Source: Octopus bimaculoides (lineage: Eukaryota). Taken from it: a stretch of 64,000 nucleotides of DNA. This document shows positions 1,107 through 46,529 of the stretch, in pieces. The notes below the pieces were generated by a model that searched no databases, was not told the DNA's origin, and worked only from the letters and a program-made list of their open reading frames with translations. How positions within the stretch are numbered: the stretch's first letter is position 1; each line of letters starts with the position of its first letter. The stretch spans positions 59,471,415 through 59,535,414 of the forward strand of contig NC_068993.1 in the NCBI RefSeq assembly GCF_001194135.2. Reading direction: 5' to 3'. The position numbers and the translations under genes are program-made.

Positions 1107-1847
1107 ATGGCAAAAAATTTAGGAAAGTCTTTATATGTATGTGATATCTGTAACAAGTCATTCACTAAACAATATCATCTTACTACTCATATACGTATTC
1201 ATACAGGAGAGAGACCTTATCACTGTGATATCTGTGGGAAATCATTCAGTCAAAGTGGTGAGTTAACTATTCACAAACGTCTTCATACAGGAGAGAAGCC
1301 ATATCATTGTGATATCTGTGGTCAGTCGTTCATTCGTAAAGATATTTTAACTACACACAGACGTATTCATACAGGAGAGAAACCTTATCACTGTGATATG
1401 TGCAGTAAGTCATTTGCTAAAAGTACTAACTTAACTGATCACAAACGCATTCATACTGGAGAAAAACCATATCATTGTGATTTCTGTGGTAGATCATTCA
1501 ATCAAAATAATCAGCTAATTAAGCACAAACGTATTCATACTGGAGAAAAGCCCTATCACTGTGACATCTGTAACAAATCATTCTCTCGAAATGATGAGTT
1601 AACTGCACACAAACACATGCATACGGGAGAGAAACCATATCAGTGTGATAGCTGTGGTAAATCATTCCCCCGAAATGGTCAGTTAACTGCACACAAACGC
1701 ATTCATACTGGAGAAAAACGATTTCCTTGTGATATCTGTGGTAAAGCTTTCAATCAAAGTAATGTTTTAAAGGGACACAAACGAACTCATTCTGGGAAAA
1801 AAGCATTGATAACACTTGATATAAGTGGTAAGTCCTTTTCTCAATAA
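1107..1847 (+). CDS. C2H2 zinc finger protein, cluster copy A (8 intact fingers, 246 aa, C-terminus truncated by premature stop)
   Basis: Eight C-x2-C-x12-H-x3-H repeats with TGEKPY linkers; ATG homologous to the other copies; decayed finger sequence continues past the stop to about 1950. Confidence 0.9.
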   Translation: MAKNLGKSLYVCDICNKSFTKQYHLTTHIRIHTGERPYHCDICGKSFSQSGELTIHKRLHTGEKPYHCDICGQSFIRKDILTTHRRIHTGEKPYHCDMCSKSFAKSTNLTDHKRIHTGEKPYHCDFCGRSFNQNNQLIKHKRIHTGEKPYHCDICNKSFSRNDELTAHKHMHTGEKPYQCDSCGKSFPRNGQLTAHKRIHTGEKRFPCDICGKAFNQSNVLKGHKRTHSGKKALITLDISGKSFSQ

Positions 1848-2088
1848 TAGGTCAACTAAGCACAAAAGTAGTGGCATCAAGAAAACTATATCACTAATAG
1901 TTGTTTAAACCATTCTCTTAGTAGACTTAACTCTTCACATCTGTATTGCATGAAAGAAACCAACTCAGTGATGTTTGTGGTATTTCTCTCATATACATGT
2001 ATGTTCATACCAAAGCATGACAACCAAACAATTCTTCCTAGTATAAGAATAAGCCTGAAAGTCTTGTGGGGCTGGTTGATGACATTAA

Positions 2089-2172
2089 CCCCAGTGTTCA
2101 ACTGGTACTTATTTTATCAACCTTGAAAGGATGAGAAGCAAAGTCACTCTTGGTGAAGTTTGAACTCAGAAC
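2089..2172 (-). mobile_element. tRNA-derived SINE fragment (family of the 58443-58612 copy)
   Basis: ccccagtgttcaactggtacttattttatc...ggatga...gcaaagtc...tttgaactcagaac matches the near full-length copy. Confidence 0.65.
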
Positions 2173-2239
2173 ATGGACAAAGTGACAACTAAGTAATAAT
2201 GAATTAATGAACCAAAATATTTCATATTATAATCATATA

Positions 2240-2999
2240 TAGGGTGCGGTGAATATATTGTTGGCTAAATTACACAAAACGAACATAACACTGACATCTC
2301 ATTTTAACATACCAAAATTATACAAAAATATCTTGATATACTAAAGAGTAAATTTATTCAATAAAGTCGCCTTTAGCTTCAGCCATGACCTCCAGATGAC
2401 TTTGGAATCTCCTGCAACTCTTCTGGATAGTCTCCTTGTTTAAGTTGGCGAATGCTGCCATAATCCTTGCCTTCAGTTCATCTTTGGTGTTACAAGGAGT
2501 TTTGTTGGTCTCTCACTCAACTGTGCATCATAAATAATCAAGAGGGTTGCAGTCTTAGAGCCTTGACTGGGTTTTCTTCTTGTGTAGCGTAGTGTGGAGT
2601 CCTGTTGCCAGACATAAGGTTTTTCAGCACCTACCCTCTTGACCCAGAGCAGCACTACCTCCTCCAAGCACTTGATGTAAGCCTCCATGTTGAGTCTGAG
2701 GCCATGTGGGAAGACGAATGGAGGCATAATGTCATCATCACTAGTGATCACTCCAAGTACCATCATGTTGACTGGATGTGATTTTATCATTCTCAGTACA
2801 TGTCTTCAGATTGACACCCAAACACTCTGAACTGTTATTATTGGAGCTTCTGAAATTTCTAGCAGAATGAATTGCATCATGGCACTATTTTTCTCACAGG
2901 CTGTGCCCAACTGACCCTACTATACTGTATAATTGACAACAGCAAACAATGTGTGAAATTAAAAATATAAAATGGTGATAATTTACCCATTCCACCCTG
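2240..2999 (-). mobile_element. Internally deleted IS630/Tc1/mariner (maT/DD37D-like) transposon
   Basis: Minus-strand peptides MVLGVITSDDDIMPPFVFPHGLRLNMEAYIKCLEEVVLLWVKR..PYVWQQDS and ETNKTPCNTKDELKARIMAAFANL; ends TA|TAGGGTG and CACCCTG|TA fit TA duplication and CAGGGTG-type termini. Confidence 0.8.
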
Positions 3000-7027: not shown

Positions 7028-7969
7028 ATGGCCAAAAAATTAGGAAAGTCTTCATATGAATGTGATATCTGTAAAAAGTTATTCACTACAAAAGGTCATC
7101 TTACTACTCATATACGTATACATACAGGAGAGAAACCATATCACTGTGATATCTGTGGTAGATCATTCTCTCGAACTGATGAATTAACCACTCACAAACG
7201 TGTTCATACAGGAGAGAAACCATATAAATGTGATATCTGTGGTCAATCATTTACACGTAGAGATATTTTAACCACACACAGACGTATTCACACAGGAGAG
7301 AAACCATATCAGTGTGATATGTGTAGTAAATCATTCTCCAAACGTAATAATTTAGCTGATCATAAACGCATTCATACTGGAGAAAAACCATATCAGTGTG
7401 ATTTTTGTGGTAGATCATTCAATCAAAATAATCAGCTAATTAAACACAAACGTATTCATACAGGAGAAAAGCCCTATCACTGTGATGTCTGTGACAAATC
7501 ATTCTCTCGAAATGATAAGCTAACTGCTCACAAACACATTCATACAGGAGAGAAACCATATCAGTGTGATACCTGTGGTAAATCATTCCCTCGAAATAGT
7601 GCCTTAACTGATCATAAACGCATTCATACTGGAGAAAAACGATTCCATTGTGGTGTTTGTGGTAAAGCATTTGTTCAAAGTAATGTTTTAAAGGGACATA
7701 TTCGCATTCATACAGGAGAAAAACCGTATCCTTGTGATATCTGTGGTAAAGCATTTGCTCAGAGTACTGATGTAACTGTTCACAAACGTATTCACACTAA
7801 AGAAAAGCCATATCATTGTGATATTTGTGGTAAAGCATTCTCTCGCAGAAATTATCTAGCTAAGCACAAAAGTATTCATACAGCTTCAAGACTGCATCAC
7901 TGTAATATCTGTGATAAATCATTCCCTCAGCATGATGATTTAACTAATCACACATGTATTCCTACATGA
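7028..7969 (+). CDS. C2H2 zinc finger protein, copy B (10 intact fingers + degenerate terminal finger, 313 aa)
   Basis: Uninterrupted ORF of tandem C2H2 fingers; acceptor tttttatccttcag 2 nt before the ATG. Confidence 0.95.
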
Positions 7970-9878: not shown

Positions 9879-9909
<31 letters not shown>

Positions 9910-12213: not shown

Positions 12214-15200
12214 GACTCAGAATCATGATTTTCAAATTTTAATTTTAAGTCAACACAAACATATTAGGTTATGTTTAAAAACGCGATGTTGTTTTTTTTT
12301 CACGTTAGTTTATATTCTTGAATATGTTTAACAAATCTTCATCTGCTGTAAGCGTTAGAGTTTATCATTTTAACGAAATCAGAAAGGGAGAAATGCGAAC
12401 AACGCAAGTATAATTTGAAATCGGGGGCCCGGTTAGCCCTAGCGGTAATTTGAAATCGATTTTAGATGACCGGGTGGTAACTTGAAAGGCAGAGCACGTT
12501 GAAGTCTTTACACCGGGCTATCAATCGGAATGTTTACGAAACTGTGGTTAACAATAAATATCTGAGTGTCTCCAGATTCTCCTTTTCTATTTTATGTTAA
12601 TTGCATTCTTTTCCTGGTTTCGCTGTTTCCCACCAAATGTCTGCTACAACAATTTCTAAAGATGTCATATTGTTAAGTCAAGTGAATTAACATTATGTAA
12701 AGAAAACATAAGTAAGTATTTATAGGATTCAAAATTACATATTTACCCCTTCCCTCAATTTTCTTCCCCATGAACTACTGTTATCTATTCTGAAATTCCA
12801 GCATTCTCAATATTTCATTTCTCCTTTGAAATTTTAACTTTCTGTATATTAATTACTTTTCCACCCATAGCTACATCTCGTACACCGCATAGAAATCCCA
12901 CCCACTCATTTTCTACCAGGGTCTTCTCTTCTTTCATATTTACTAATAAATTAATCTTTGCTAAATTCATTTTGATGTCTGTCGATTTGTTTTCATGCTT
13001 GAAATTTATTTTCTACTAATACAGATTTAGCTATGGTGCATCCCATCTCCTTGCTGAATTCATAGCTATACTCTTTTGTTAAATCTTATTTTGTTGACTT
13101 TTATCCCTATACATCGTTTGTGTAGCTTTCACAAGGCATTATTCATCTATTCCAGATTTCACCAGACCACAACTACGAACCCTACCATAGTTACTTGGTC
13201 AACAAATGCTAGGTATTGGGGCTTATTCCTGGCTAGATACTTCTCGGTTTTGTCACTACAAAACAATAATAGTACTTCGTTGATACAACTCCAAAGTGCA
13301 TTGTGTTTATGTTTAGTTTCTTGCTAGAATTCTTTCTATTATCTTTATTGCGTAATCCAACAGTTCGTCTGTAGTTTCCTCTCTCACGTTGTATCGTCTT
13401 TGTCTTTGAAATACTTGACAATAATTCTTCTGTACCAGATACCACATGTGAAATGCTCTTACGCGGTTTCTTTATATTTTCCATACTTGAGATTCGTGAA
13501 TAATATGACAAAATAATATTGCTTTATATAAATATGATTTACTTCTTGGAAAAAGGTTTTTCATTCAATGTCAGCTTCCGGTATTAACGTAGCAATTACC
13601 TAAACAATATTTCGTTGCAGGCGAAATTTTCCTTTTTCATTCTAATTATTGTTTTCATTTCAAGCTTTCATTCGCTATTTGCAAACAACTACGATAAATT
13701 ACCGAAAGACATATTTACTAAGCAAGTGAGACATTTTATAAATTTTGAAGAAAATTTACTTTCTGAAGTTCCTTTTACTATTGAATGTTTCCAGTTCACA
13801 AATTTAAATATTTGGTATGAAATAGTTTTTAACGAACTTTTATTTACAGGATTTTCTTCATTTCATGTTTATTTCATTCAGTGTTTGCAATGTTCTTTCT
13901 CTCTCTCTCTCTAATATAAACACACACTGTCTCTGTAATATATACACAAATACTCCAGGCTTAATTTTGTTATTACACAAATAGGATATTAGAATTTTGC
14001 AATTCAACATAAGATGACCAAAAAAAAAACAAAAAAAAATATATGGGCGTCTTTTCGCTTGAAGGTGACATTTCTTTTGTGGCATGATATGATATGTATC
14101 TCTATTATATGTATATCTCTGCTCTGTTATGTCTGAAATAATGTTGTGATACTTTGGATAGATTCAGTTATATTCTGCAATTTATCACCATAGAAATATA
14201 AATTTTTGTTGTTCACACTGTACTGTTTAACTATTCTTTATATCTTATTCTGTTTATCTATCATTTCAGGTCCTTGATGAAACTGGTATCAAAATAATAT
14301 TTTACATCAGAAGCATCATCAATATTTATCAGCTTTTAAAGATAAAGGAAGATTCTATATAAGAAATATGATACTTGTATAAATCTGAGGAAATATGGCA
14401 ACATTTTTCAGTCTTGGTGAGATTGTTAGCAACGTTTTTGAAAGTCACTGTCTGGAATGAGAACAAAATTCTGCATTCTAAATAAATATATAATTATAAA
14501 TTACTTTACATCATCTTCAGATATTGGTAAAGACTGCAGTTGATGGGAATATAACTGAAGGAATACTTTTTAAAAATAATTTATAAAAAGAAAAGCAAGT
14601 GAAGTATTCATATATTGTGGAGAAATAAGAAAAACGTATAATGAGATGAGTTAACAGATTGATTCACATTTTTGTCCTTCAGAAATGGCCAAAAAAGTAG
14701 GAAAGTCTTCACATGAATGTGATATCTGTGGAAAGTTATTCACTACAAAGGATCATCTTACTACTCATACACGAATACATACAGGAGTGAAACCATATCA
14801 ATGCGACATCTGTGGTAGATCATTCTCACGAACTACTGAATTAACCACTCACAAACGTGTTCATACAGGAGAGAAACCATATAAATGTGATATCTGTGGT
14901 CAGTCATTTACACGTAGAGATGTTTTAACCAGACACAGACGTATTCACACAGGAGAGAAACCATATCAGTGTGATATGTGTAGTAAATCATTCCCCAATA
15001 GTACTAACCTGACTGCTCACAAACGCATTCATACTGGAGAAAAACCATATCATTGTGATTTCTGTGGTAGATCATTCACCCAAAATAACCAGCTAACTAA
15101 ACACAAACGTATTCATACAGGAGAAAAGCCCTATCAATGTGATATGTGTGACAAATCATTCTCTCGAAATGATAATCTAACTGCTCACAGACACATTCAT

Positions 15201-15669
15201 ACAGGAGAGAAGCCATATTGGTGTGATATCTGTGGTAAATCATTCCCTCGAAATAGTGCCTTAATTGATCATAAATGCATTCATACCGGAGAAAAACGAT
15301 TCCATTGTGACGTGTGTGGTAAAGCATTTGTTCAAAGTAATCTTTTAAAGGGACATATACGCATTCATACTGGGGAAAAACCGTATCATTGTGATGTCTG
15401 TGGTAAATCGTTTGCAAAAAGTACTGCCGTAACTCTACACAAACATATTCACACTAAAGAAAAGCCATATCATTGTGATATTTGTGGTAAAGCATTCTCT
15501 CGCAGAAATTATCTAGCTAAGCACAAAAGTATTCATACAGCTTCAAGACTGCATCACTGTAATATCTGTGATAAATCATTCCCTCAGCATGATGATTTAA
15601 CTAATCACACATGTATTCCTACATGAGAAACAAAAACACATCATTGATTTTTCCAGTAATCATTCTCAC
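12214..15669 (+). repeat. Segmental duplication unit containing ZNF copy C (partner 4817-8012)
   Basis: Collinear homology with the B unit, including promoter block, introns and CDS. Confidence 0.9.
14685..15626 (+). CDS. C2H2 zinc finger protein, copy C (10 intact fingers + degenerate terminal finger, 313 aa)
   Basis: Intact ORF, same length as B; acceptor tttttgtccttcag 2 nt before the ATG. Confidence 0.95.
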
Positions 15670-17480: not shown

Positions 17481-17814
17481 CCTCTGAGTAGCTCCTGCAG
17501 TTCTTGCGAGGGAGGTAAACCCTCTCAGATGTTTATTTTACCTGCAGTAATACATAAATAAATAGGTGTCAAGAATGTACAGTATAATCTGAGAGAAATG
17601 TGGCTGCTGTTTCTAGCAGATTGCGCAGGTACGCAGAGGTTCCATTGATAATATGAAGTTGTTTAGTCGCAGAAAAGCCATGGCTGTTCAGACTTGGCTA
17701 CACGGTGCTGGTCAATCCATAGTTGTTAACGGAATAACTACGAAACTACGTGTAATTATGAATCTCTAAGTGTCTACATATTTTCTTTTATACATTTATG
17801 ATAATAACAGTTTA

Positions 17815-17933
17815 TCCAGATTTTCTTACTTCCGCCCAGCATCTACCAAAATCATTTCCGGCGGAGAACATTGTCTTATGTTTGTTAAAAGAATTTACCA
17901 AAGAAAATACAAAGATAAAAAGGAAAAGTGAGT
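17815..17933 (+). promoter_or_regulatory. Putative promoter/exon 1 of ZNF D (ETS-like ACTTCCGCC at 17828 and TTTCCGGCG), donor GTGAGT at 17928
   Basis: Block conserved in six paralog cassettes at the same position relative to the CDS. Confidence 0.7.
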
Positions 17934-19230: not shown

Positions 19231-19677
19231 AATAAATTTCCACAATTAAATTATCCTCTATATCTTGTACTGTTTTTCTTATTTCAGGATCCTTACCGAA
19301 ACTGGCATAAAAAAAAAGTGTTTTTATATCTGAAGCATTGTTAATATTCCCCATCTTTTCAAGACTCAAGGATGATGTTATGCAGAACAAATATAACCAT
19401 GTTTATATAAAGTCTTGTGAATTATGGAGAAAGGTTTCTTCTGGGTGAGATTATTTGCAACATTTGTGTAATTCACTGTCTGGAATGAGTACAAAATACT
19501 TTTGCATTGTGTAAAGATAAATCTATAAAGGATTTTGCAGAGTCGATGGACCTACAGCAGAAGGAATATTTGTTAGCAATAAATTGCAGAAAGGAAAGCA
19601 AAAGGCATATTCATATGATGTGGTGAAAGAAGGAAAATTGTTGTTTGTTTAAAATATTAATTCTTTATCCTGAAGAG

Positions 19678-20973
19678 ATGGCAAAAGATTTAGCAAAATC
19701 TTCATATGAGTGTGATATCTGTAACAAGTCATTCACTAAACAATGTCAACTAACTACTCATATACGTATTCATACAGGAGAAAAACTACATTACTGTGAT
19801 TTCTGTGGTAAAGCATACATTCGAAATGATGAGTTAACTATTCACAAACGTATTCATACAGGAGAGAGGCCATATTACTGTGATGTCTGTGGTAAGACTT
19901 TTTATCGAAGTGGTGAGTTAACTATTCATGTACGTGTTCATACAGGAGAGAAACCATATCAGTGTGATATCTGTGGCAAATCCTTCACTCGTACAGATAT
20001 TTTAACTACACACAAACGTATTCACACAGGAGAGAAACCATATCAGTGTGATATGTGCAGTAAATCATTCCCCAATAGTACTAACCTGACTGATCACAAA
20101 CGCATTCATACTGGAGAAAAGCCATATCACTGTGATTTCTGTGGTAAATCATTCAATCAAAGCAATCAGCTAATTAAACACAAACGTATTCATACAGGAG
20201 AAAAGCCTTTTCACTGTGATGTATGTGATAAATCATTCTCTCGAAACGATGAGTTAACTGCTCACAAATATGTTCATACAGGAGAAAAACCTTATCAATG
20301 TGATATCTGTGGTAAATCATTCCTTCAAAATAGTGCCTTGACTGGACACAAGCGTATTCATACTGGAGAAAAACGATATATTTGTGATGTTTGTGGTAAA
20401 GCATTTCCTCGAAGTAATAACTTAACTGCACACAAACGTATTCATACCAAAGAAAAACCATTTCATTGTGGTGTGTGTGGTAAATCATTTTCACACAGTA
20501 ATTCCTTAACTGATCACACACGTATTCATACTGGAGAGAGACCTTATCACTGTGATGTCTGTGGTAAAACATTCCCTCGAAGTAATTCTTTGAGTGATCA
20601 CAAGCGCATTCATACTGGAGAAAAACCATATCATTGTGAAATTTGTGGTAAAACATTTATTCGGAGTAATGAGTTAAAGGTCCATAAACGTATTCACACA
20701 GGAGAAACACCATATCATTGTGATGTCTGTGGTAAATCATTCTCTCAAAATAATTCCTTGACTAATCACAAACGCATTCATACTGGGGAAAAACCATATG
20801 ATTGTGATATCTGTGGTAAATCATTCTCTAGAAATAATTCCTTGGCTGACCACAAACGCGTTCATACTGGAGAAAAACCATATCAATGTAATGTCTGTGG
20901 TAAATCATTCTCTCAGCATGCTGCTGTAGCCGTACATAAACGTGTTCATGCCAGAGAAAAGCCACAGCATTGA
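19678..20973 (+). CDS. C2H2 zinc finger protein, copy D (15 fingers, 431 aa)
   Basis: Intact ORF from the conserved ATG ([12 protein letters not shown]); stop TGA occupies the first Cys codon of finger 16. Confidence 0.95.
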   Translation: MAKDLAKSSYECDICNKSFTKQCQLTTHIRIHTGEKLHYCDFCGKAYIRNDELTIHKRIHTGERPYYCDVCGKTFYRSGELTIHVRVHTGEKPYQCDICGKSFTRTDILTTHKRIHTGEKPYQCDMCSKSFPNSTNLTDHKRIHTGEKPYHCDFCGKSFNQSNQLIKHKRIHTGEKPFHCDVCDKSFSRNDELTAHKYVHTGEKPYQCDICGKSFLQNSALTGHKRIHTGEKRYICDVCGKAFPRSNNLTAHKRIHTKEKPFHCGVCGKSFSHSNSLTDHTRIHTGERPYHCDVCGKTFPRSNSLSDHKRIHTGEKPYHCEICGKTFIRSNELKVHKRIHTGETPYHCDVCGKSFSQNNSLTNHKRIHTGEKPYDCDICGKSFSRNNSLADHKRVHTGEKPYQCNVCGKSFSQHAAVAVHKRVHAREKPQH

Positions 20974-23951: not shown

Positions 23952-23999
23952 TCTAAGTGTATCCATATTTTGTTTTTCTATTTATGATAATAAATATTT

Positions 24000-24114
24000 A
24001 TTCGGATTCTGTTACTTCCGCCAAGCATCTACCATAATCATTTCCGGCGAAGAACTTTGTCGCATATTAATCGAATTTATCAAAGAAATTATAAAGGTAA
24101 AAAGAAAAGTAAGT
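24000..24114 (+). promoter_or_regulatory. Putative promoter/exon 1 of ZNF E, donor GTAAGT at 24109
   Basis: ACTTCCGCC at 24014 and TTTCCGGCG; conserved among paralogs. Confidence 0.7.
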
Positions 24115-24585
24115 ATTTATAATGTTTAAATCGATATTAAATATTTCCAGGACGGATCTTCGGAATAACTGTGGTTTCTTCACGGGAAATGAAAAAGGAG
24201 CGAAGAATTGGGAAGGTTTTTCTTTTTCCTTCATCATTCAATATTTTATGATAGTCCGATGAAATTTCTATCAGAATCGTAATTTCCTTTGTATCAAACA
24301 CAGGAATACTACGAAAAAGTGGGGTGGTTTTCGAAATAGCAGTCACTAATAAAATGGAATTTCTCGAAGATTTTTTTGTTATTTTTTGGTATTTTTACCT
24401 TTTGTAGAATCTCAAAGTAGATGTAAATCTCTTTAAAAAAGAAAAAAGAAAAATATTCCGTATCTTTGCTTTTTTGAAATGTCTCACTCTCTCTGTCCTT
24501 CTCAATTACGATTTCGGAATATCTGCCATGATTCTCATGAATTAATTTTCTTCCCAATTTCCTGTCTATTCTGAAATATTTACAC

Positions 24586-26610: not shown

Positions 26611-27801
26611 ATGGCAAAAAGCTTAGCAAAGTCTTCATATGAATGTGATATCTGTAAAAAATCATTAACTTCAAGAAGTAATTTAACTACTCATATACGT
26701 ATTCATACAGGAGAGAAACCATATCACTGTGATATCTGTGGTAAAAGGTTCTCTAGAACAGATGAATTAACTGTTCATGTACGTGTTCATACAGGTGAAA
26801 AGCCATATCAGTGTGATATCTGTGGTCAGTCATTCACTCGTAAAGATATATTAACTACACACAGACGTATTCACACAGGAGAGAAACCATATAAGTGTGA
26901 TATGTGCAGTAAATCATTCTCTAAAAGTACTAACTTAACTGATCACAAACGCATTCATACTGGAGAAAAACCATACCATTGTGATTTTTGTAGTAAATCA
27001 TTTAATCAAAATAACCAGTTAATTAAACACAGACGTATTCATACAGGAGAAAAACCCTTTCACTGTGATGTCTGTGACAAATCATTCTCTCGAAATGATG
27101 AGTTAACTACACACAAACATATTCATACAGGAGAGAAGCCATATTGGTGTGATATCTGTGGTAAGTCGTTCCCTGTAAATAATGCCTTGACTGTACACAA
27201 ACGTATTCATACTGGAGAAAAACGATATCATTGTGATATTTGTGGCAAAGCATTTATTCAAAGTCGTGATTTAGAAGGACATAAAAGCACACATACTGGA
27301 GAAAAACTATATCATTGTGATATTTGTGGTAAAGCATTTTCACAAAGTCCTGCTGTAACTGTACACAAAAGAATTCATACTAGAGAAAAGCCATATCACT
27401 GTGATATCTGTGGTAAATCATTCCCTCGAAGTGATTATTTGCGTGATCACAAACGTATTCATACGGGAGAAATACCATATTGTGAAATCTGTGGTAAATC
27501 ATTTATTCGGAGTAACTATTTAAAGGGACATAAACGTATTCATACTGGAGAAAAGCCATATCATTGTGATATCTGTGGTAAAGCATTCTCTCAACGTACT
27601 GCTGTAACTGTACATAAACGTGTTCATACCAGAGAGAGGCCATATCATTGTGATATCTGTGGTAAATCATTCTCTTACAGTTACCTATTGAATAAGCACA
27701 AATGTATTCATATGGGAGAAAATTCATATCCGTGTAATATCTGTGGTAAATCATTCTCTCAACAGGATGATTTAGCTATTCATGTCTGTATTCTTCCATG
27801 A
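26611..27801 (+). CDS. C2H2 zinc finger protein, copy E (13 fingers + degenerate terminal finger, 396 aa)
   Basis: Intact ORF from the conserved ATG; acceptor ttctaaaaag abuts the ATG. Confidence 0.95.
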   Translation: MAKSLAKSSYECDICKKSLTSRSNLTTHIRIHTGEKPYHCDICGKRFSRTDELTVHVRVHTGEKPYQCDICGQSFTRKDILTTHRRIHTGEKPYKCDMCSKSFSKSTNLTDHKRIHTGEKPYHCDFCSKSFNQNNQLIKHRRIHTGEKPFHCDVCDKSFSRNDELTTHKHIHTGEKPYWCDICGKSFPVNNALTVHKRIHTGEKRYHCDICGKAFIQSRDLEGHKSTHTGEKLYHCDICGKAFSQSPAVTVHKRIHTREKPYHCDICGKSFPRSDYLRDHKRIHTGEIPYCEICGKSFIRSNYLKGHKRIHTGEKPYHCDICGKAFSQRTAVTVHKRVHTRERPYHCDICGKSFSYSYLLNKHKCIHMGENSYPCNICGKSFSQQDDLAIHVCILP

Positions 27802-32128: not shown

Positions 32129-32987
32129 GAGAGAAACCATATCAGTGTGATATGTGCAGTAAATCATTCGCTAAAAGTACTAACTTAACTGATCACAAAC
32201 GCATTCATACTGGAGAAAAACCATATCACTGTGATATCTGTGGTAAATCATTCAATCAAAATAACCAGTTAATTAAACACATACGCATTCATACAGGAGA
32301 AAAACCCTATCACTGTGACGCCTGTGACAAATCATTCTCTCGAAATGATGAGTTAACTGCACACAAACACGTTCATACAGGAGAGAAACCTTATAGGTGC
32401 GATATCTGTGGTAAATCATATACTCTAAATAATGCTTTGACTGTACACAAACGTATTCATACTGGAGAAAAACGATTTATTTGTGATATTTGTGGTCAAG
32501 CATTTATTCGAAATTCTTCTTTAGAAGGACATAAAAGAATTCATACTGGAGAAAAACTATATCATTGTGATATTTGTGGTAAAGCATTTACACATAGTCC
32601 TGCTGTAACTGTACACAAACGCATTCATACAAGAGAAAAACCATATCATTGTGATATTTGTGGTAAATCATTCCTTCAAAGTGGTTGCTTGCGTGATCAC
32701 AAACGTATTCATACTGGAGAAAAACCATATCATTGTGATGTCTGTGGTAAATCATTTATTCAGAGTAACGATTTAAAGGGACATGTACGTATTCACACTG
32801 GAGAAAAACCATATCATTGTGATATCTGTGGTAAATCATTCTCTCAACGTGCTGCTGTAACTGTTCACAAACGTGTTCATACCAGAGAAACGCCATATCA
32901 CTGTGATATCTGTGGTAAATCATTCTCTCAACTTACTGCTATAACAGTACATAAACGTGTTCATACCAGAGAAAAGCCATTTCATTG
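32129..32987 (+). CDS. C2H2 zinc finger protein, copy F (partial; 10 fingers visible, both ends in gaps)
   Basis: Open frame of tandem fingers between two N gaps; conserved exon-2 acceptor at 31242. Confidence 0.9.
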
Positions 32988-34953: not shown

Positions 34954-35935
34954 TCATCATCATCATCATCATCATCGTTTAACGTCCGCTTTCCATGCTA
35001 GCATGGGTTGGACGATTTGACTGAGGACTGGTGAAACCGGATGGCAACACCAGGCTCCAGTTTGATTTGGCAGAGTTTCTACAGCTGGATGCCCTTCCTA
35101 ACGCCAACCACTCAGAGAGTGTAGTGGGTGCTTTTACGTGTCACCCGCACGAAAACGGCCACGCTCGAAATNNNNNNNNNNNNNNNNNNNNNNNNNNNNN
35201 NNNNNNNNNNNNNNNNNNNNNNNNNNNNNNNNNNNNNNNNNNNNNNNNNNNNNNNNNNNNNNNNNNNNNNNNNNNNNNNNNNNNNNNNNNNNNNNNNNNN
35301 NNNNNNNNNNNNNNNNNNNNNNNNNNNNNNNNNNNNNNNNNNNNNNNNNNNNNNNNNNNNNNNNNNNNNNNNNNNNNNNNNNNNNNNNNNNNNNNNNNNN
35401 NNNNNNNNNNNNNNNNNNNNNNNNNNNNNNNNNNNNNNNNNNNNNNNNNNNNNNNNNNNNNNNNNNNNNNNNNNNNNNNNNNNNNNNNNNNNNNNNNNNN
35501 NNNNNNNNNNNNNNNNNNNNNNNNNNNNNNNNNNNNNNNNNNNNNNNNNNNNNNNNNNNNNNNNNNNNNNNNNNNNNNNNNNNNNNNNNNNNNNNNNNNN
35601 NNNNNNNNNNNNNNNNNNNNNNNNNNNNNNNNNNNNNNNNNNNNNNNNNNNNNNNNNNNNNNNNNNNNNNNNNNNNNNNNNNNNNNNNNNNNNNNNNNNN
35701 NNNNNNNNNNNNNNNNNNNNNNNNNNNNNNNNNNNNNNNNNNNNNNNNNNNNNNNNNNNNNNNNNNNNNNNNNNNNNNNNNNNNNNNNNNNNNCCACATG
35801 TCCATACCAGCGCAATCGTCTCTCTTGCACGCCACAACTGATGCTTCTAATGTTCAGCTTTTCTCTCAAGATACTTACACTCTGACGGGTATTCACATTG
35901 ACATTACACATCCAACGGAGCATACTGGCTTCACG
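34954..35935 (-). mobile_element. Young 5'-truncated RTE LINE with (GAT)n tail, spanning a gap
   Basis: EASMLRWMCNVNVNTRQSVSILREKLNIRSISCGVQERRLRWYGHV on the right; 3' end gcatggaaagcggacgttaaacgatgatgat on the left. Confidence 0.9.
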
Positions 35936-36674
35936 GAGCATAATACAAAGAATATATATACATGTATACACACATATATGTACATACTTACATCTACATG
36001 TGTATATATGCATATCAGGGTACAGGACGTTAGAACAATGAACTACAGACAACGGAACGAACACATAGGAAAACGGAAAGCCACTTGGAATATTCCTTCA
36101 TCAGCTGTCTCTATTCTATATATATATATATATTGAAAGAGTACCTATATATATACGACGGGCTTCTTTCAGTTTCCGTCTACCATGTCCACTCTCAAGG
36201 CTTTGGTCAGGCTGAGGCTATAGTAGAAGACAGTTGTCCAAAGTGCCACGCAATGGGACTGAACACGGAGCCATGTGATTGGTATAGAAGCTACTTACCA
36301 TGCATCCACTCCTGCGCCTATTGTACGTATTAATAAAAAGTACGTACACAGCATTGCGGCATTGTATAGCGTGGAATGACATTAACGAACATAGTCCCCC
36401 AATCAAGATTGAATGGTATAACTTAAGATAAAATTGACAGTAGAACAACTACGAAACTATGTGTAATATTAAATCTCTAAAAGTATCCATATTCTGTTTT
36501 TCTATTTATGATAATAAATGTTATGGATCTGTTTATTAATTGGTTTTGCAAGAATCCAGATGTGAAATCGCGTGTTGTTTTTGTTTCTTTTCGTTTTTTT
36601 CTTTTTGCCAAATAAACACACGCACTATATATTTTTTGTTCACTCGTGTATTATTGTTATAATAATAAATGTTT

Positions 36675-36790
36675 ATCCGGATTCTGTTACTTCCGCCTAG
36701 CATCTTACCATAATCATTTCCGGCGAAGAACTTTGTCGCATGTTAATTGAATTTAGCAAAGAAAATATAAAGGTAAAAGGAAAAGTAAGT
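36675..36790 (+). promoter_or_regulatory. Putative promoter/exon 1 of ZNF G, donor GTAAGT at 36785
   Basis: ACTTCCGCC at 36689 and TTTCCGGCG. Confidence 0.7.
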
Positions 36791-37480
36791 ATTTATAGTG
36801 TTTAAATCGATATAAAATATTTTCAATGCGGATCTTCGGAATAACTGTTGTTTCTCCACGGGAAATGAAAAGAGCAAAAACGTGGGAGGGTTTTTTCTTC
36901 CCCTTCATGATTTTCATAGATTACGATTGTCCGCCAAAATTTCTATCAGAATCGTAATTTCCTTTGTATCAAACATAGGAATACTACGAAAAAAAGAAAT
37001 GGGTTGGCTTTCGAAATAGCTGTTTCTGGTAAAATAGAATTGCTCTGAGTTTTTTTTTTTGTTTCATTTGTTGTATTTTCATAATTATTTAGCATCGCAC
37101 TTTGCAAAACAGATATTAAAAAGAAAAGAAATTGAGTATCTTTGCTTTTTTGAAATGTCTCAGTCTCTTTGTCCCTCTCTATTACACCTTCGGAATAGCT
37201 GCCACGATTCTCATGAATTAATTTTCTTTCCGATTTTCCGTCTGTCCTNNNNNNNNNNNNNNNNNNNNNNNNNNNNNNNNNNNNNNNNNNNNNNNNNNNN
37301 NNNNNNNNNNNNNNNNNNNNNNNNNNNNNNNNNNNNNNNNNNNNNNNNNNNNNNNNNNNNNNNNNNNNNNNNNNNNNNNNNNNNNNNNNNNNNNNNNNNN
37401 NNNNNNNNNNNNNNNNNNNNNNNNNNNNNNNNNNNNNNNNNNNNNNNNNNNNNNNNNNNNNNNNNNNNNNNNNNNNNNNA

Positions 37481-38140
37481 TCGTATATACTAGAGTAAAA
37501 GTCGATCCCCTATTTGGTGATCTTTCGGTACTTATATCGAATTTGTGCCCCTATTTTTGGCAAAAATATGGGTAATTTTCCATGGACCCATATAGAAGCT
37601 CACCCTAGTAATTCACGAACAACAGAACAACATTTGTTGGTGAAGGTACAGTGTTATCCTGTACAACTCTACACCATATTATGGACAATATACTGGTGAT
37701 CCAGCAAACCTCTTTTGAAACACCCCGAGTAGGTATCAGGTGCCTGCACCGTATTACAGTAGGTAGTGGCATGCTGGTACCAGGTAGGTAGATATGTTAC
37801 CTGTGGAGATATAACCTAATTATGAGATATAGATTAATTTCACTCAGCTAGTCTGGTAAGTTTGATGGATACAAATAAAAGAGATAAGGTAAATATTTTT
37901 AAGAGCTACGTGGCTTTCTTTATGGGTTTTGTTATTTATTAGGACGTGTGTTTTGATGCACAGAATTCGTAATATTACTAATTGTGTTGTTTTTATTCGC
38001 TTAGAGGTCGTTTGGATTTCTGTTGCTGATTATAGCTTGAATTTCAGCCGCTTAAGAGTATTATCCATAGAATAGTCGGCCCCTAAATTTGGCCTTAAAA
38101 TATGGTCTAAAAAATTCAACTTTTACATGAGTATATACGG
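37481..38140. mobile_element. 660-bp Tc1/mariner-superfamily (Tc2/pogo-like) MITE in intron 1 of G
   Basis: TIR tcgtatatactagagtaaaagtcga vs ttcaacttttacatgagtatatacgg|TA; same terminus at 48561-48594 in H. Confidence 0.7.
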
Positions 38141-38986
38141 TATATTTTTTACTTGTTTCAGCCATTAGAGTGCGGCCAGGCTGGGGCATCGCCTTAAAAG
38201 GTTTAGTTGAACAAATAGATCCCAACTGTTGCAAGTCTGGTACTTAATTATGTCGGTTACTTTTTGCCCAACCGCTATATTACGGTGACGTAAACGAACC
38301 AACTAAAAAAATTCTTTACCATCCTTCATCCTGAAATTACCATTCCATTCTTGAAAAAGAATTCTTTAAAATTCCATTTTTCAACATTTCGTTCGTGAAG
38401 AATATGATTGCAATTTTGAAAGTAGTATCTATAAAATGATAATTTCAGTTGTTTAAAAAGTAGATACACTGGAGGAATTCATTTGTTCTGGTCAAGGTTT
38501 CACTTCTACAATTTATAACTATAGTAATGAAATGAAATTTATGCTGTTTATGCATTCTTGAAATCTTATACTGTTTTCCTTATTATTTCAGAATCAGAGC
38601 AGAAACTGGCATAAACAATTTCGTTTTTACACAACAGAAGCATCAACAATATTTATCATCTTTTAAGGACAAAAGATGTTAAACTGAACAAATATAACCA
38701 TTTTCATATAAATTTAATGAATTACGTTGAAAGATTTCCTCTGGGTAAGATTATTAAGCAACATTTGTGTGTGTCATTCTCTGGAATGAGTCCAATACAA
38801 TTCTGCATTTTAAATATATTCAGGTAGATTTATGAAGCACTTTGCATCCAGATGATGGACATATAGCAGAAGGAATATTTGTTAGAAATAAATTATAGAA
38901 AGAAAAGCAGCAAACATATATTGTGGTAAGAGAAGAAAAATTATTATTGAATGAGTTAAACAACTGTTACTTTTGGTTCTAAAAAG

Positions 38987-40012
38987 ATGGCAAAAAGCTT
39001 GGCAAAGTCTTCATATGAATGTGATATCTGTAACAAGTCATTAACTTCAAGAAGCACTTTAACTGCTCACATACGTATTCATACAGGAGAGAAACCATAT
39101 CGCTGTGATATCTGTGGTAAAAGGTTTACTAGAAGAGGTGAATTACCTGTTCATTTACGTGTTCATACAGGAGAGAAACCATATCGGTGTGATATCTGTG
39201 GTCAGTCATTCATGCGTAAAGATATTTTAACTACACACAGACGTATTCATACAGGAGAGAAACCATATAAATGTGATATGTGCAGTAAGTCATTTGCTAA
39301 AAGTACTAACTTAACTGATCACAAACGCATTCATACTGGAGAAAAACCATATCACTGTGATATCTGTGGTAAATCATTCAATCAAAATAACCAGTTAATT
39401 ACACATAGACGCATTCATACAGGAGAGAAGCCCTATCACTGTGATGTCTGTGACAAATCATTCTCTCGAAATGATGAGTTAACTACACACAAGCTAAGTC
39501 ATACAGGAGAGAAACCTTATAGGTGTGATATCTGTGGTAAATCATTTACTCTAAATAATTCCTTCAATGTACATAAACGTATTCATACTGGAGAAAAACG
39601 ATTTATTTGTGATATTTGTGGTAAAGCATTTATTCAAAATCATTGTTTGGAAGTACATAAAAGCATTCATACTAGAGAAAAATTATATCGCTGTGATATT
39701 TGTGGCAAAGCATTTACACATAGTCCATCTTTAATTGTACACAAACACATTCATACAAGGGGAAAGTCGTATTGTTGTGATATCTGTGGTAAATCATTCT
39801 CTGATCGTACTGCTGTAACTGTACATAAACGTGTTCATACTGGAGAGAAGCCATATCATTGTGATATCTGTGGTAAATCATTCTCTTACAAAAATGTGTT
39901 AACTAAGCACAAATGCATTCATATGGGAGAAAAATCATATCAGTGTAATATCTGTGGTAAATCATTCTCTCAACAGGATGATTTAGCTATTCATGTCTGT
40001 ATTCCTCATTGA
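38987..40012 (+). CDS. C2H2 zinc finger protein, copy G (11 fingers + degenerate terminal finger, 341 aa)
   Basis: Intact ORF from the conserved ATG. Confidence 0.95.
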
Positions 40013-43990: not shown

Positions 43991-44344
43991 AACAAAGAGG
44001 CAGGAGATAAAGAGTATTGCCTAAGGGAGGATGACCAACTGAATACTCTCCAGCTTGGCAAATTCTGTGCAGCGCATAAGATATTTGCCTGCTGAGTGAG
44101 TTCCAGCTTGCTCTGGAGTGTTGCCGATTGTGTGGGGTCACACTGCTAGAATAGGAAGGGCTGCTCAGTCATGGCTTTTCTTGGACTAAACAACAACGGA
44201 GGAGCAATAGAACCTCTACATACTTGCACGATCTGCTAGAAACAAATGTCAAATTTCCTCAAGTTATACTAATCAGTTTTGATTGGAGGAATATGTTCAT
44301 TAATGTATTCCATGCTATACAATGCCGTGATGCTGTGTAGGCAG

Positions 44345-44622
44345 CCAGTGCCAGGTGACTGGTCCCGTGCTGGTGGCACGTAAAAAGCACCATTCAAGCA
44401 TGGTCAATGCAATGCCACTACCACCTGACTGGCCCTCGTGCTGGTGGGGCATAAAAAGCACCCACTTCACACTTGGAGTGGTTGGCGTTAGGAAGGGCAT
44501 CTGGTTGTAGGAACTTTGCCAGTTCAGATTGGAGCCTGATGCAGCCTTCTGGCTTACCAGCCCTCAGTCAAACTGTCCAACCCATGCCAACATAGACAGC
44601 GGATGTTAAACGATGATGATGA
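44345..44622 (+). mobile_element. RTE LINE 3' end with (GAT)n tail
   Basis: gttggcgttaggaagggcatc...cccatgccaacatagacagcggatgttaaacgatgatgat. Confidence 0.8.
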
Positions 44623-45335
44623 CATACAATATATTTATTGGTGAAAATCAGTTTAGAAAATACAAAAACAAAAACAAGCTAATTTCATAGTAAACCAGTT
44701 TTATTTAGAGTTTAAATTGTTATAAAAATTGATAAAGACTCGCAGCCAGAACTTTGGAATTTACACTTGAAATGACAAAATGCTCGAGATGACAATCATC
44801 ATTATCATCATTCAATGACGCTGATGATGATGATGATGTGGTCCAACACATTCCAGCATTGATGACGATAATTCAAAACATTACCCCACTAATTTTGTTA
44901 TTATGTAAAGTTTAATACTACAATGACAAATTAACATTAATTTTCATCATAAACTATGTCATAGATAAAATTATAGGTATTACCAACAACAGAATTAATC
45001 TCTGGATAAAATACAATAATGATAAAACAAGAATCAATATAATATACCTGAAAGAATATACACAACNNNNNNNNNNNNNNNNNNNNNNNNNNNNNNNNNN
45101 NNNNNNNNNNNNNNNNNNNNNNNNNNNNNNNNNNNNNNNNNNNNNNNNNNNNNNNNNNNNNNNNNNNNNNNNNNNNNNNNNNNNNNNNNNNNNNNNNNNN
45201 NNNNNNNNNNNNNNNNNNNNNNNNNNNNNNNNNNNNNNNNNNNNNNNNNNNNNNNNNNNNNNNNNNNNNNNNNNNNNNNNNNNNNNNNNNNNNNNNNNNN
45301 NNNNNNNNNNGTTAAGAGATTTTTCAATGGTTCTC

Positions 45336-46529
45336 TCATGGAAGAATACAGACATGAATAGCTAAATCATCCTGTTGAGAGAATGATTTACCACAGATAT
45401 TACACGGATATGAATTTTCTCCCATATGAATACATTTGTGCTTATTCAATAGGTTACTGTATGAGAATGATTTACCACAGATATCACAATGATATGGCGT
45501 TTCTCTGGTATGAACACGTTTGTGTACAGTTACAGCAGTACTTTGAGAAAATGATTTACCACAGATATCACAATGAAATGGCTTTTCCCCAGTATGAATA
45601 CGTACATGTCCCTTTAAATCGTTACTCTGAATAAATGATTTACCACAGATTTCACAATGATATGGCTTTTCTCCAGTATGAACACGTTTATGTGCATTTA
45701 CAGCAGTAAGTTGAGAGAATGATGTGCCACAAATATCACAATGATATGGTTTTTCTCTTGTATGAATGCGCATGTGTACAGTTACAGCAGGTCTATGTGT
45801 AAACGCTTTACCACAAATATCACAATGATATAGTTTTCCTCCAGTATGAATGCTTTTATGATCCTCTAAATCACGACTTTTAAGAAATGCTTTGCCACAA
45901 ATATCACAATGATATCGTTTTTCTCCAGTATGAATACGTTTGTGTACAGTCAAAGCATTATTTACAGGGAACGACTTACCACAGATATCACACCAATATG
46001 GTTTCTCTCCTGTATGAATATGTTTGTGTGTAGTTAACTCATCGTTTCGAGAGAATGATTTGTCACAGACATCACAGTGATAGGGTTTTTCTCCTGTATG
46101 AATGCGTATGTGTTTAATTAACTGGTTATTTTGATTGAATGATTTACCACAGATATCACAATGATATGGTTTTTCTCCAGTATGAATGCGTTTGTGATCA
46201 GTTAAGTTAGTACTTTTAGCGAATGCTTTAGTGCACATATCACACTGATATGGTTTCTCTCCTGTATGAATACGTCTGTGTGTAGTTAAAATATCTTTAC
46301 GCATGAATGACTGACCACAGATATCACACTGATATGGTTTCTCTCCTGTATGAACACGCACATGAACAGGTAATTCACCTTTTCTAGTGAACCTTTTACC
46401 ACAAAAATCACAGTGATATGGTTTCTCTCCCGTATGAATACGTATATGAGCAGTTAAATTACTTCTTGAAGTTAATGACTTGTTACAGATAACACATTCA
46501 TATGAAGACTTTGCTAAGTTCTTTGCCAT
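45336..46529 (-). CDS. C2H2 zinc finger protein, copy H (13 fingers + degenerate terminal finger, 397 aa)
   Basis: Intact minus-strand ORF from the conserved ATG ([12 protein letters not shown]). Confidence 0.95.
   Translation of the reverse strand: MAKNLAKSSYECVICNKSLTSRSNLTAHIRIHTGEKPYHCDFCGKRFTRKGELPVHVRVHTGEKPYQCDICGQSFMRKDILTTHRRIHTGEKPYQCDMCTKAFAKSTNLTDHKRIHTGEKPYHCDICGKSFNQNNQLIKHIRIHTGEKPYHCDVCDKSFSRNDELTTHKHIHTGEKPYWCDICGKSFPVNNALTVHKRIHTGEKRYHCDICGKAFLKSRDLEDHKSIHTGGKLYHCDICGKAFTHRPAVTVHMRIHTREKPYHCDICGTSFSQLTAVNAHKRVHTGEKPYHCEICGKSFIQSNDLKGHVRIHTGEKPFHCDICGKSFSQSTAVTVHKRVHTRETPYHCDICGKSFSYSNLLNKHKCIHMGENSYPCNICGKSFSQQDDLAIHVCILP

What the first reader, a model, noticed from the sequence alone, without database searches (positions are those of the whole stretch)
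1107..46529. Conserved four-finger core flanked by hypervariable recognition helices
Helix residues -1 to +6 of fingers 3-6 read RKDILTT, KSTNLTD, QNNQLIK, RNDELT(A/T) in A, E and H, with one change in G; F shows fingers 4-6, I keeps finger 3, and B, C and D carry variants. Fingers 1-2 and 7 onward differ in nearly every copy (finger 8: QSNVLKG, QSRDLEG, RNSSLEG, QNHCLEV, KSRDLED). Inference: a shared ~12-bp anchor or protein/RNA surface plus variable specificity modules.
Basis: partly seen in the sequence, partly recalled or inferred. Interest (0 to 1): 0.72.

Follow-up and report, generated by a model that had tools for sequence, protein, structure and literature searches.

The report
Octopus zinc-finger cluster with conserved core
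Nine tandem copies of a young zinc-finger gene in the Octopus bimaculoides genome keep four neighbouring fingers almost unchanged while the DNA-reading residues of the other fingers change freely, which is the usual way such gene clusters evolve and gives a testable shared 12-bp target.

Summary
The window is Octopus bimaculoides chromosome CM046613.1. It holds nine paralogous C2H2 poly-zinc-finger coding exons with no effector domain: A-H inside the stated range, I at 52072-52359.

All quoted helix strings are exact. No assembly gap lies inside an array. Copy F is an 859-bp island between two gaps, so its fingers 1-3 and its tail are unread.

Synonymous divergence is the same in core fingers 3-6 and in flanking fingers 1, 2 and 7 (pS 0.289 vs 0.286). 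Helix non-synonymous change is about four times lower in the core (omega 0.27 vs 0.93). Zinc ligands never change.

In non-core fingers, replacements pile up at -1, +1, +2, +3 and +6, at roughly the neutral rate (contact omega 0.98, not significantly above 1).

So the core is held by purifying selection, not by pure conversion. Short conversion tracts do exist in finger 4 (A-G, C-D). Some of the "hypervariability" beyond finger 7 reflects finger gain, loss and non-orthologous positions.

The 12-bp anchor function is untested. This is an ordinary lineage-specific poly-ZF cluster of the kind known from KRAB-ZNF and FiNZ genes. Interest is modest.

The parts
1107..1847 (+). Copy A: 8 intact fingers. 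The core is fingers 3-6, at 1308-1622. Fingers 9-11 have decayed downstream: cysteines lost, two stops and a deletion.
7028..7969 (+). Copy B: 10 fingers plus a degenerate last finger. Core at 7229-7543, with variant helices RRDILTT, KRNNLAD, QNNQLIK, RNDKLTA.
14685..15626 (+). Copy C: sister of B (92% DNA identity). Core at 14886-15200. Its finger 4 (NSTNLTA) carries a conversion-like tract shared with D, at about 14983-15012.
19675..20973 (+). Copy D: 15 fingers, with one extra finger (D2) after finger 1. The core is therefore D4-D7, at 19963-20277.
26611..27801 (+). Copy E: 13 fingers plus a degenerate last finger. Core at 26812-27126. It is on record as a called 396-aa single-exon gene in GCA_001194135.2 (CM046613.1).
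32129..32987 (+). Copy F: a partial array of 10 fingers on an 859-bp contig island between two assembly gaps. Only core fingers 4-6 (32146-32376) are readable. The start, fingers 1-3 and the C-terminus are unread.
38987..40012 (+). Copy G: 11 fingers plus a degenerate last finger. Core at 39188-39502, with one change (QNNQLIT). Its finger 4 (39272-39355) is 99% identical in DNA to A's finger 4; the significant A-G conversion-like tract is about 39283-39352 (about 1403-1472 in A).
45336..46529 (-). Copy H: inverted orientation, 13 fingers plus a degenerate last finger. Core at 46014-46328. It is on record as a called 397-aa single-exon gene.
52072..52359 (-). Copy I: fingers 1-2 are intact. The finger-3 helix RKDILTT (52096-52158) is fused directly to the tail of the last finger, through an internal deletion of fingers 4-13. 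It lies outside the finding's stated range.
23952..24584 (+). Conserved upstream element, shown here for E. Homologous copies lie at 17796-18089 (D), 29524-30144 (F), 36657-37243 (G), 48677-49312 (H, minus strand) and 53600-54156 (I, minus strand). It is probably a promoter or non-coding first exon, with a donor-like AAAG|GTAAAAGGAAAAGTAAGT and up to three CTTCGGAATARCTG motifs.

Best explanation
This is a tandem cluster of young paralogous poly-C2H2 zinc-finger genes in Octopus bimaculoides. Seven copies are direct and two are inverted. It is part of the known cephalopod C2H2 expansion.

Shown:
- Each gene has a single coding exon that starts MAK.L.KSSYEC, about 11 residues before finger 1. 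A splice-acceptor-like tract sits directly upstream, and a conserved putative promoter or 5'-UTR element lies 1.2-2.7 kb further 5'. No effector domain is detectable.
- The copies arose by unit duplication. They then diverged by point substitution, by gain, loss and deletion of whole fingers (mostly 3' of finger 7), and by short inter-paralog conversion tracts.
- Selection is finger-specific. The zinc ligands and framework are constrained in every finger. In fingers 3-6 the recognition-helix residues are as constrained as the framework (omega ~0.27). In the other fingers the base-contacting positions -1, +2, +3 and +6 change at about the neutral rate.

Inferred, not shown:
- Fingers 3-6 are joined by canonical TGEKP linkers. 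I infer that they form a contiguous DNA-binding module reading a shared ~12-bp site in all paralogs.
- The flanking fingers would extend or alter specificity, or be free to drift. This resembles the division of labour between core and peripheral fingers in long poly-ZF proteins.
For: Identity of the locus: E and H are exact called genes on GCA_001194135.2 CM046613.1. That accession is O. bimaculoides.

Family: Pfam finds only C2H2 families in the ORFs. It finds nothing in any open segment of at least 45 aa in the 5.6-kb D-E intergenic region.

Gene structure: a polypyrimidine tract plus AG sits directly before the ATG in all copies. The upstream element is conserved.

Selection:
- Per-finger trees give core helix S=15, N=15 (omega 0.27), against flank helix S=14.5, N=41.5 (omega 0.93; contacts 1.33). 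Synonymous rates are equal. Fisher P=0.03.
- With all alignable fingers, core helix N is 15 against 57.8 expected (P=2e-11). Non-core contact omega is 0.98 and non-core framework omega 0.24.
- Over 21 pairs, pS is 0.289 (core) vs 0.286 (flank), and pN is 0.058 vs 0.139.
- Within the young E/F/G/H clade, helix non-synonymous differences for fingers 3-6 are 0, 0, 3 and 3. For fingers 2, 7, 8 and 9 they are 20, 13, 33 and 15.
- The zinc ligands show 0 replacements but 16 synonymous changes. Non-core replacements peak at -1, +1, +2, +3 and +6.

Conversion: A-G and C-D tracts in finger 4.

Finger indels: D's extra finger, I's internal deletion, A's decayed tail, and rearranged order in F versus H.

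The same set of processes is described for vertebrate lineage-specific poly-ZF expansions (PMC2604467; PMC10547256).
Against: - No binding, expression or orthologue data could be obtained. All three word-indexed protein searches and the HMMER representative search were swamped by generic C2H2 proteins. Whether the core is conserved beyond these nine copies is therefore unknown.
- The sample is small (7-8 sequences, ~28 helix codons per class) and the pairwise comparisons are not independent.
- Per-finger tree topologies differ. Recombination therefore violates tree-based counting.
- Omega ~1 at flank contacts does not separate diversifying selection from relaxed constraint.
- A hand-derived recognition-code motif for the core is not enriched in the window: 2 hits against 1.42 expected.
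- Two copies (A, I) are truncated and may be pseudogenes.
Confidence: 0.6

Rival explanations
1. The core looks conserved only because inter-paralog gene conversion keeps homogenising fingers 3-6. There would be no selection on their helices.
For: Two conversion-like tracts fall in finger 4: A-G, 99% identity against ~80% in fingers 1, 2 and 7 (P=0.001), and C-D (P=0.0016). Per-finger tree topologies are mosaic. A-G and A-H pS is somewhat lower in the core, 0.22-0.24 against 0.30-0.31.
Against: - Averaged over all pairs, core pS equals flank pS (0.289 vs 0.286, Wilcoxon P=0.81).
- Synonymous changes per site on the trees are equal.
- D pairs have higher pS in the core than in the flanks.
- Fingers 5 and 6 keep their helices across clades at only 82-92% DNA identity.
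Confidence: 0.07
2. Fingers 3-6 are the only fingers used for sequence recognition. The helices of the other fingers are simply unconstrained and drift, so the paralogues are largely redundant in target choice rather than carrying 'variable specificity modules'.
For: Non-core helix omega is 0.85 and contact omega 0.98, which is not distinguishable from neutrality (P=0.35 for excess). Whole fingers are gained and lost freely 3' of finger 7. Copies A and I have lost their C-terminal fingers. Linkers become non-canonical after finger 7: TGEKRF, TGEKLY, TREKPY, MGENSY.
Against: - Framework omega in these fingers stays at 0.24 and no zinc ligand is ever replaced, so the fingers are kept folded.
- Replacements concentrate at base-contact positions rather than evenly along the helix.
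- Individual fingers reach a contact omega of 1.5 (finger 7) and 2.9 (finger 8), though the counts are small.
Confidence: 0.22
3. The conserved four-finger block is a protein- or RNA-interaction surface (for example dimerisation or cofactor recruitment in a protein that lacks any effector domain), and not a DNA anchor.
For: No effector domain is present, so some part of the array may have to recruit partners. C2H2 fingers are known to mediate protein contacts (PMC12774644, abstract listed).
Against: Fingers 3-6 have fully canonical TGEKP[YF] linkers. They also carry typical base-contacting residues (R/K/Q at -1, D at +2 after R, N/E/Q at +3). By established knowledge of Krueppel-type arrays these are hallmarks of DNA-binding fingers. 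There is no direct test.
Confidence: 0.08
4. The cluster is mostly decaying pseudogenes or assembly duplicates, and the pattern has no functional meaning.
For: A and I are truncated. F sits between gaps. A 422-bp flank of F is 99.3% identical to H's flank. B, A and D are not on record as called genes with exactly these products.
Against: - Seven arrays keep open frames of 313-432 codons in 35% GC DNA.
- No zinc ligand is replaced in about 90 fingers.
- Framework omega is 0.2-0.3.
- Copies differ by 6-30% in DNA, so they are not collapsed or duplicated assembly copies.
Confidence: 0.03

Closest known systems
Lineage-specific tandem expansions of vertebrate poly-ZF / KRAB-ZNF genes (Emerson & Thomas 2009, PMC2604467; Nowick 2011, PMC3126818)
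   Same: Tandem clusters of young paralogues. Framework and zinc ligands are constrained, while change concentrates at helix contact residues. There are short GENECONV-type conversion tracts, and frequent gain and loss of whole fingers (compared).
   Different: No KRAB, SCAN or BTB exon was found here. The protein is essentially the array alone. Positive selection (omega > 1) is not demonstrated. A contiguous four-finger block shared by all paralogues is under purifying selection, and this is not highlighted as a general feature in the passages of those papers that I read.
Cephalopod C2H2 superfamily expansions (Albertin 2022, PMC9068888; Holzinger 2025, PMC12513265)
   Same: Same organism and gene class. 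O. bimaculoides carries a greatly expanded C2H2 complement, partly in chromosomal clusters.
   Different: Term searches of the Holzinger paper, which treats gene counts, phylogeny and expression, found no mention of positive selection, gene conversion or recognition helices. Finger-by-finger selection in a single cluster does not appear to have been addressed there. I did not place these genes in their expansion classes.
Cyprinid FiNZ-ZNFs and the TE arms-race model for metazoan ZNFs (Wells 2023, PMC10547256)
   Same: An independent, lineage-specific poly-ZF expansion in which base-contacting residues are the most variable. Octopus ZNF ORFs were among those examined there for predicted binding-motif matches to TE consensus sequences.
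   Different: No FiNZ-like N-terminal domain is present. No TE target has been identified for this cluster. The conserved core argues for a stable shared target rather than a moving one.
CTCF-type division of labour between central and peripheral fingers (my own knowledge, not tested here)
   Same: It works alike in the inferred sense: a central block of fingers reads a constant core motif, while the flanking fingers contact variable modules.
   Different: In CTCF this holds within one conserved protein across its sites. Here it would hold across paralogues. There is no homology beyond the C2H2 fold, and no binding data exist here.

Membership tests
C2H2 (Krueppel-type) poly-zinc-finger proteins | Tandem C-x2-C-x12-H-x3-H fingers recognised by Pfam zf-C2H2 / zf-H2C2_2 | tested here: met
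   About 93 fingers at strict 28-residue spacing. PF00096 scores E=3e-77 and PF13465 scores E=5e-108 for copy E.
C2H2 (Krueppel-type) poly-zinc-finger proteins | Conserved TGEKP-type inter-finger linkers | tested here: met
   The linkers after fingers 2 to 6 are TGEKP[YF] in all copies; the one after finger 1 departs from it in A, C and D (TGERPY, TGVKPY, TGEKLH). Downstream linkers vary: TGEKR[FY], TGEKLY, T[RK]EKPY.
KRAB-ZNF / SCAN-ZNF / BTB-ZF / ZAD-ZNF | An N-terminal effector or oligomerisation domain encoded upstream of the finger exon | tested here: not met
   Only 11 residues precede finger 1. Pfam finds no non-ZF domain in the ORFs, including the in-frame upstream sequence. It finds none in any open segment of at least 45 aa, on either strand, in the D-E intergenic region 20974-26610. 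E and H are called as stand-alone genes of 396 and 397 aa. Exons shorter than 45 aa, or lying further away, would have been missed.
Cephalopod / octopus-specific C2H2 expansion | Encoded in a coleoid genome, in a tandem cluster of close paralogues | tested here: met
   Exact match to GCA_001194135.2 CM046613.1 at 59.50-59.52 Mb. That accession is O. bimaculoides. There are nine copies at about 6-7 kb spacing, and the full-length copies are 81-94% identical over fingers 1-7.
Cephalopod / octopus-specific C2H2 expansion | Phylogenetic placement inside an octopus-specific (rather than coleoid-wide) duplication clade | not testable with these tools
   Protein searches returned only generic C2H2 hits of 60% identity or less, even among octopus proteins. 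No orthologues could be retrieved.
PRDM9-like minisatellite finger arrays | A PR/SET domain, plus near-identical tandem fingers that differ almost only at -1, +3 and +6 | tested here: not met
   No SET domain is present. Fingers within one array are only 60-86% identical in DNA.

The most novel reading that the evidence does not exclude
The invariant four-finger block would tether every paralogue to one common ~12-bp sequence, with the rapidly changing outer fingers discriminating between variants of it. The common sequence could be a particular octopus repeat family, or the CTTCGGAATARCTG motif that occurs up to three times, 175-179 bp apart, in the cluster's own conserved upstream elements. 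That would be an 'anchor-and-discriminate' design, possibly with auto- or cross-regulation of the cluster. My hand-derived code for the core (nCG GAA CAG nTG) differs by one base from TCGGAATAGCTG in the F and G upstream elements. However, the hit count in the window is not above chance (2 vs 1.42).
Probability: 0.1. Interest if true: 0.6.

Novelty: new member of a known kind. Interest (0 to 1): 0.3.

Why it matters
Cephalopod genomes carry well over a thousand C2H2 genes, and their targets are unknown. The recent cephalopod C2H2 study states that finding their binding sites is the open next step (PMC12513265).

This cluster offers a small, clean test case. Several near-identical proteins share one constrained four-finger module and differ elsewhere. 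A single SELEX or DAP-seq series could therefore show two things: whether octopus poly-ZF paralogues share an anchor site, and what the variable fingers add.

In evolutionary terms it shows that the vertebrate-style mix also operates in an independent molluscan expansion that lacks any KRAB-like domain. That mix is framework constraint, contact-residue turnover, finger indels and micro-conversion. This is confirmation rather than a surprise.

Tried and rejected
1. Finding family members outside the window.
   - The search for homologous proteins was run with full-length E, with the four-finger core, and with an N-terminus plus fingers 1-2 profile. The HMMER representative search was also run.
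   - All were swamped by generic C2H2 proteins. Best identities were about 55-60% (up to 83% over short partial alignments), and the hits seemed to scale with query length.
   - Exact-sequence cluster look-up found none of eight window proteins.
   - The look-up of encoding contigs found E and H but not A, B or D, so I could not walk beyond the window.
2. Effector-domain exons. Pfam on the ORFs and on open segments of the D-E intergenic region found nothing.
3. Structured RNAs and tRNAs. None were found.
4. A recognition-code motif for the core, written from memory of the canonical -1/+3/+6 rules. CGGAACAG has 0 exact hits. CGGAACAGNTG with up to one mismatch has 2 hits against 1.42 expected. 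This is not significant and is kept only as a lead.
5. A three-finger block duplication (f8-10 ~ f11-13) as an explanation of the downstream fingers. Only f9~f12 is clearly related (86%); the others are 75-78%. This is not established.
6. Pure gene conversion as the cause of core identity. Rejected on equal synonymous divergence.
7. Albertin 2015 (the octopus genome paper) is not held in the library.


Full report
**What the window is.** The window is 64 kb at 35% GC and has twelve runs of N. The protein of copy E (26611-27801) and that of copy H (45336-46529, minus strand) are exact called genes on NCBI assembly GCA_001194135.2. They sit on chromosome record CM046613.1 at about 59.50 and 59.52 Mb. 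That accession is the chromosome-scale Octopus bimaculoides assembly of Albertin et al. 2022. The paper describes a dramatically expanded C2H2 complement, partly in chromosomal clusters (PMC9068888).

**Checking the observation.** A six-frame scan for C-x2-C-x12-H-x3-H finds fingers in nine arrays at strict 28-codon spacing. Their coordinates are:
- A 1107-1847
- B 7028-7969
- C 14685-15626
- D 19675-20973
- E 26611-27801
- F 32129-32987
- G 38987-40012
- H 45336-46529 (-)
- I 52072-52359 (-)

- A, E and H read RKDILTT / KSTNLTD / QNNQLIK / RNDELT[A/T] in fingers 3-6.
- G has the single change QNNQLIT.
- F shows only fingers 4-6.
- I keeps the RKDILTT helix.
- B, C and D carry variants, many of them at non-contact positions. 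For example, B RRDILTT and D RTDILTT keep the R/D/I/T contacts.
- D has one extra finger after finger 1, so its core is D4-D7.

**Assembly gaps.** No gap lies inside any array.
- F is an 859-bp contig island bounded by gaps on both sides. Its upstream contig ends where E's homologous sequence is 228 bp 5' of the ATG. The island begins at the linker before finger 4. About 496 bp are therefore expected to be missing, against a nominal 748 N.
- Nothing can be said about continuity or frame across those gaps. F must be treated as a fragment.
- The other gaps in the stated range are intergenic.

**Gene anatomy.**
- All copies begin MAK.L.KSSYEC, only 11 residues before finger 1. The ATG is directly preceded by a polypyrimidine tract and an AG.
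- A ~600-bp element is conserved 1.2-2.7 kb upstream of D, E, F, G, H and I. It ends in a donor-like AAAG|GTAAAAGGAAAAGTAAGT.
- I read this as a non-coding first exon or promoter plus one coding exon. This is an inference; no transcript data were available.
- Pfam finds only C2H2 families in the ORFs. It finds nothing in any open segment of at least 45 aa of the whole D-E intergenic region.
- These are therefore 'naked' poly-ZF proteins, without a KRAB, SCAN, BTB or ZAD domain.

**Orthology of fingers.**
- Finger-by-finger DNA identity shows that fingers 1-7 are collinear in all copies. The unusual TGEKR[FY] linker after finger 7 is a good landmark.
- Downstream of finger 7 the arrays differ in finger number (8 to 15) and in finger order. 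B8 and C8 are closest to E11/F8/H11. An '..AVTV' finger recurs two or three times per array. F and H order their distal fingers differently.
- Copy I is an internal deletion that joins the end of the finger-3 helix to the tail of the last finger.
- Copy A has lost fingers 9-11 to point decay: cysteines are lost and there are two stops.
- So part of the 'finger 7 onward differs in every copy' impression comes from indels and non-orthologous comparison. It is not all of it, because within the young E/F/G/H clade the orthologous finger 8 is the most variable finger.

- Nei-Gojobori sums per finger column give flat synonymous divergence: pS of 0.22, 0.35, 0.23, 0.27, 0.30, 0.31 and 0.27 for fingers 1-7. 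Helix pN is 0.31, 0.24, 0.08, 0.085, 0.04, 0.08 and 0.28.
- I counted changes on per-finger NJ trees with parsimony ancestors. The core helix has S=15, N=15 (omega 0.27). The flank helix has S=14.5, N=41.5 (omega 0.93). Flank contacts have omega 1.33. Framework omega is 0.20 (core) and 0.31 (flank). Synonymous changes per synonymous site are 0.83-0.98 (core) and 0.93-0.97 (flank). Fisher P for helix N:S, core versus flank, is 0.03.
- With all alignable fingers added, core helix N is 15 against 57.8 expected at the local synonymous rate (P=2e-11). Non-core contact omega is 0.98 (65 observed, 61.6 expected, P=0.35). Non-core framework omega is 0.24.
- Over the 21 pairs of full-length copies, mean pS is 0.289 in the core and 0.286 in the flanks (Wilcoxon P=0.81). 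Mean pN is 0.058 against 0.139, with the paired difference highly significant (Wilcoxon P=3e-6). These pairs are not independent.
- By position in the finger, none of the four zinc ligands is ever replaced, although they carry 16 synonymous changes. Non-core replacements peak at -1 (14), +1 (13), +2 (20), +3 (18.5) and +6 (12.5). The structural Leu at +4 has 3.
- The core is therefore not homogenised at silent sites. Its helices are under purifying selection.
- The other fingers are kept folded. Their base-contacting residues turn over at about the neutral rate. Finger 7 (contact omega 1.5) and finger 8 (2.9) are above it, on small counts.

**Conversion does occur.**
- A GENECONV-like permutation of polymorphic sites finds an A-G tract in finger 4. 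Identity there is 99%, against about 80% for A-G in fingers 1, 2 and 7 (P=0.001).
- It also finds a C-D tract in the same finger (P=0.0016). After correction for 21 pairs these are about 0.02 and 0.03.
- Per-finger tree topologies are mosaic.
- A's identity with E/G/H in fingers 3-4 is therefore probably not independent conservation. Fingers 5-6 keep their helices across clades at 82-92% DNA identity.

**Mechanism.**
- Shown: finger-specific purifying selection, contact-residue turnover, finger indels and micro-conversion.
- Inferred from established knowledge of Krueppel-type arrays (three bases per finger; canonical TGEKP linkers mark DNA-engaged fingers): fingers 3-6 read a shared ~12-bp site, and the outer fingers modify or extend the target.
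- From the textbook -1/+3/+6 rules, written from memory, I wrote the core site as nCG GAA CAG nTG. It has no exact 8-mer hit in the window. With one mismatch it hits only TCGGAATAGCTG in the upstream elements of F and G, but 2 hits against 1.42 expected is not evidence.
- The alternative that only the core binds DNA and the rest drifts cannot be excluded, because omega ~1 fits both readings.

**Comparison with known systems.**
- The same combination is described for lineage-specific poly-ZF expansions in vertebrates: change concentrated at contact residues of recent paralogues, short conversion tracts, and different finger numbers among paralogues (PMC2604467).
- It is also described for cyprinid FiNZ-ZNFs. 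The same study included octopus among the species whose ZNF ORFs it tested for predicted binding-motif matches to TEs (PMC10547256).
- The recent cephalopod C2H2 study deals with phylogeny and expression, and leaves binding sites as an open question (PMC12513265).
- The present cluster is a new member of this known kind. Its particular feature is a contiguous four-finger block (plus the degenerate last finger, QQDDLAI / QHDDLTN) held constant among otherwise diverging paralogues.
- It is not a KRAB-ZNF, since no such domain is present. It is not PRDM9-like either, since fingers within an array are only 60-86% identical and there is no SET domain.

**Limits.**
- No relatives outside the window could be retrieved.
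- The sample is nine copies, recombination violates the tree assumption, and no expression or binding data exist.

**Verdict.**
- Observation: confirmed.
- Functional inference: plausible but untested.
- Interest: modest.

Noticed in passing
36834-37201 (also 17980, 24159-24525, 29731-30082, 49106-49118 (-), 53937-53949 (-)): The conserved upstream elements carry a 13-14-nt motif, CTTCGGAATARCTG, up to three times per element at 175 and 179 bp spacing, with no longer repeat around it. There are 11 matches in the window against 0.31 expected. It looks like a cluster of factor-binding sites in a putative promoter.
   Followed up: partly
33527-33948 vs 45059-44638 (inverted): The 3' flanks of F and H are 99.3% identical over 422 bp, while their finger arrays are only 91% identical. 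Both stretches abut assembly gaps. This could be a recent conversion or duplication, or a scaffolding artefact.
   Followed up: no
52072-52158 (-): Copy I joins the end of the finger-3 helix (…LTTH) directly to the tail of the last finger (…AIHFCIL*). This is an intragenic deletion of fingers 4-13 that leaves a protein of two intact fingers. The 3' flank is still homologous to those of E and G.
   Followed up: yes
1791-1960: Downstream of finger 8, copy A retains recognisable but dead remnants of fingers 9-11. LDIS replaces CDIC, there are two in-frame stops, and there is a deletion relative to B.
   Followed up: yes
B/C, E/H, G/H, E/G arrays vs their 480-850 bp upstream regions: In young pairs, third codon positions of the arrays are 1.5-4 times more diverged than the adjacent upstream non-coding DNA: B-C 0.096 vs 0.048, E-H 0.106 vs 0.068, G-H 0.181 vs 0.042. 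Either the upstream region is constrained or homogenised, or the arrays receive extra changes, for example by ectopic micro-conversion between fingers. This is unexplained.
   Followed up: partly
7817-7969 vs 15474-15626: The last two fingers of B and C (RRNYLAK, QHDDLTN) are 100% identical in DNA, while the other B-C fingers are 87-96% identical. This may be a recent conversion tract at the 3' end.
   Followed up: no
27463-27480: The linker after finger 10 of copy E is one residue short (TGEIPY-C). It is the only departure from 28-codon spacing in any array.
   Followed up: no
about 21640-26610 (-), 33527-38986 and 50571-50846 (-): Short open segments in the intergenic DNA look by eye like fragments of a non-LTR retrotransposon reverse transcriptase (for example …AMMWGSETWA, NAENLRRLERNKASM…, …KSMKTRKVPNPPAVTAEMLK…). 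Pfam gave no hit on the segments submitted (the D-E intergenic region and three short ORFs between H and I, one of them 50571-50846; the F-G segments were not submitted), so this remains a visual impression only.
   Followed up: partly
49634-49912, 62200-63110, 63628-63958: Microsatellite and simple-sequence tracts (GT/CA-, TC- and AT-rich, giving VRDR or poly-I/L 'ORFs') flank several assembly gaps at the right end of the window. No finger arrays lie beyond copy I, which appears to be the cluster's right edge.
   Followed up: no
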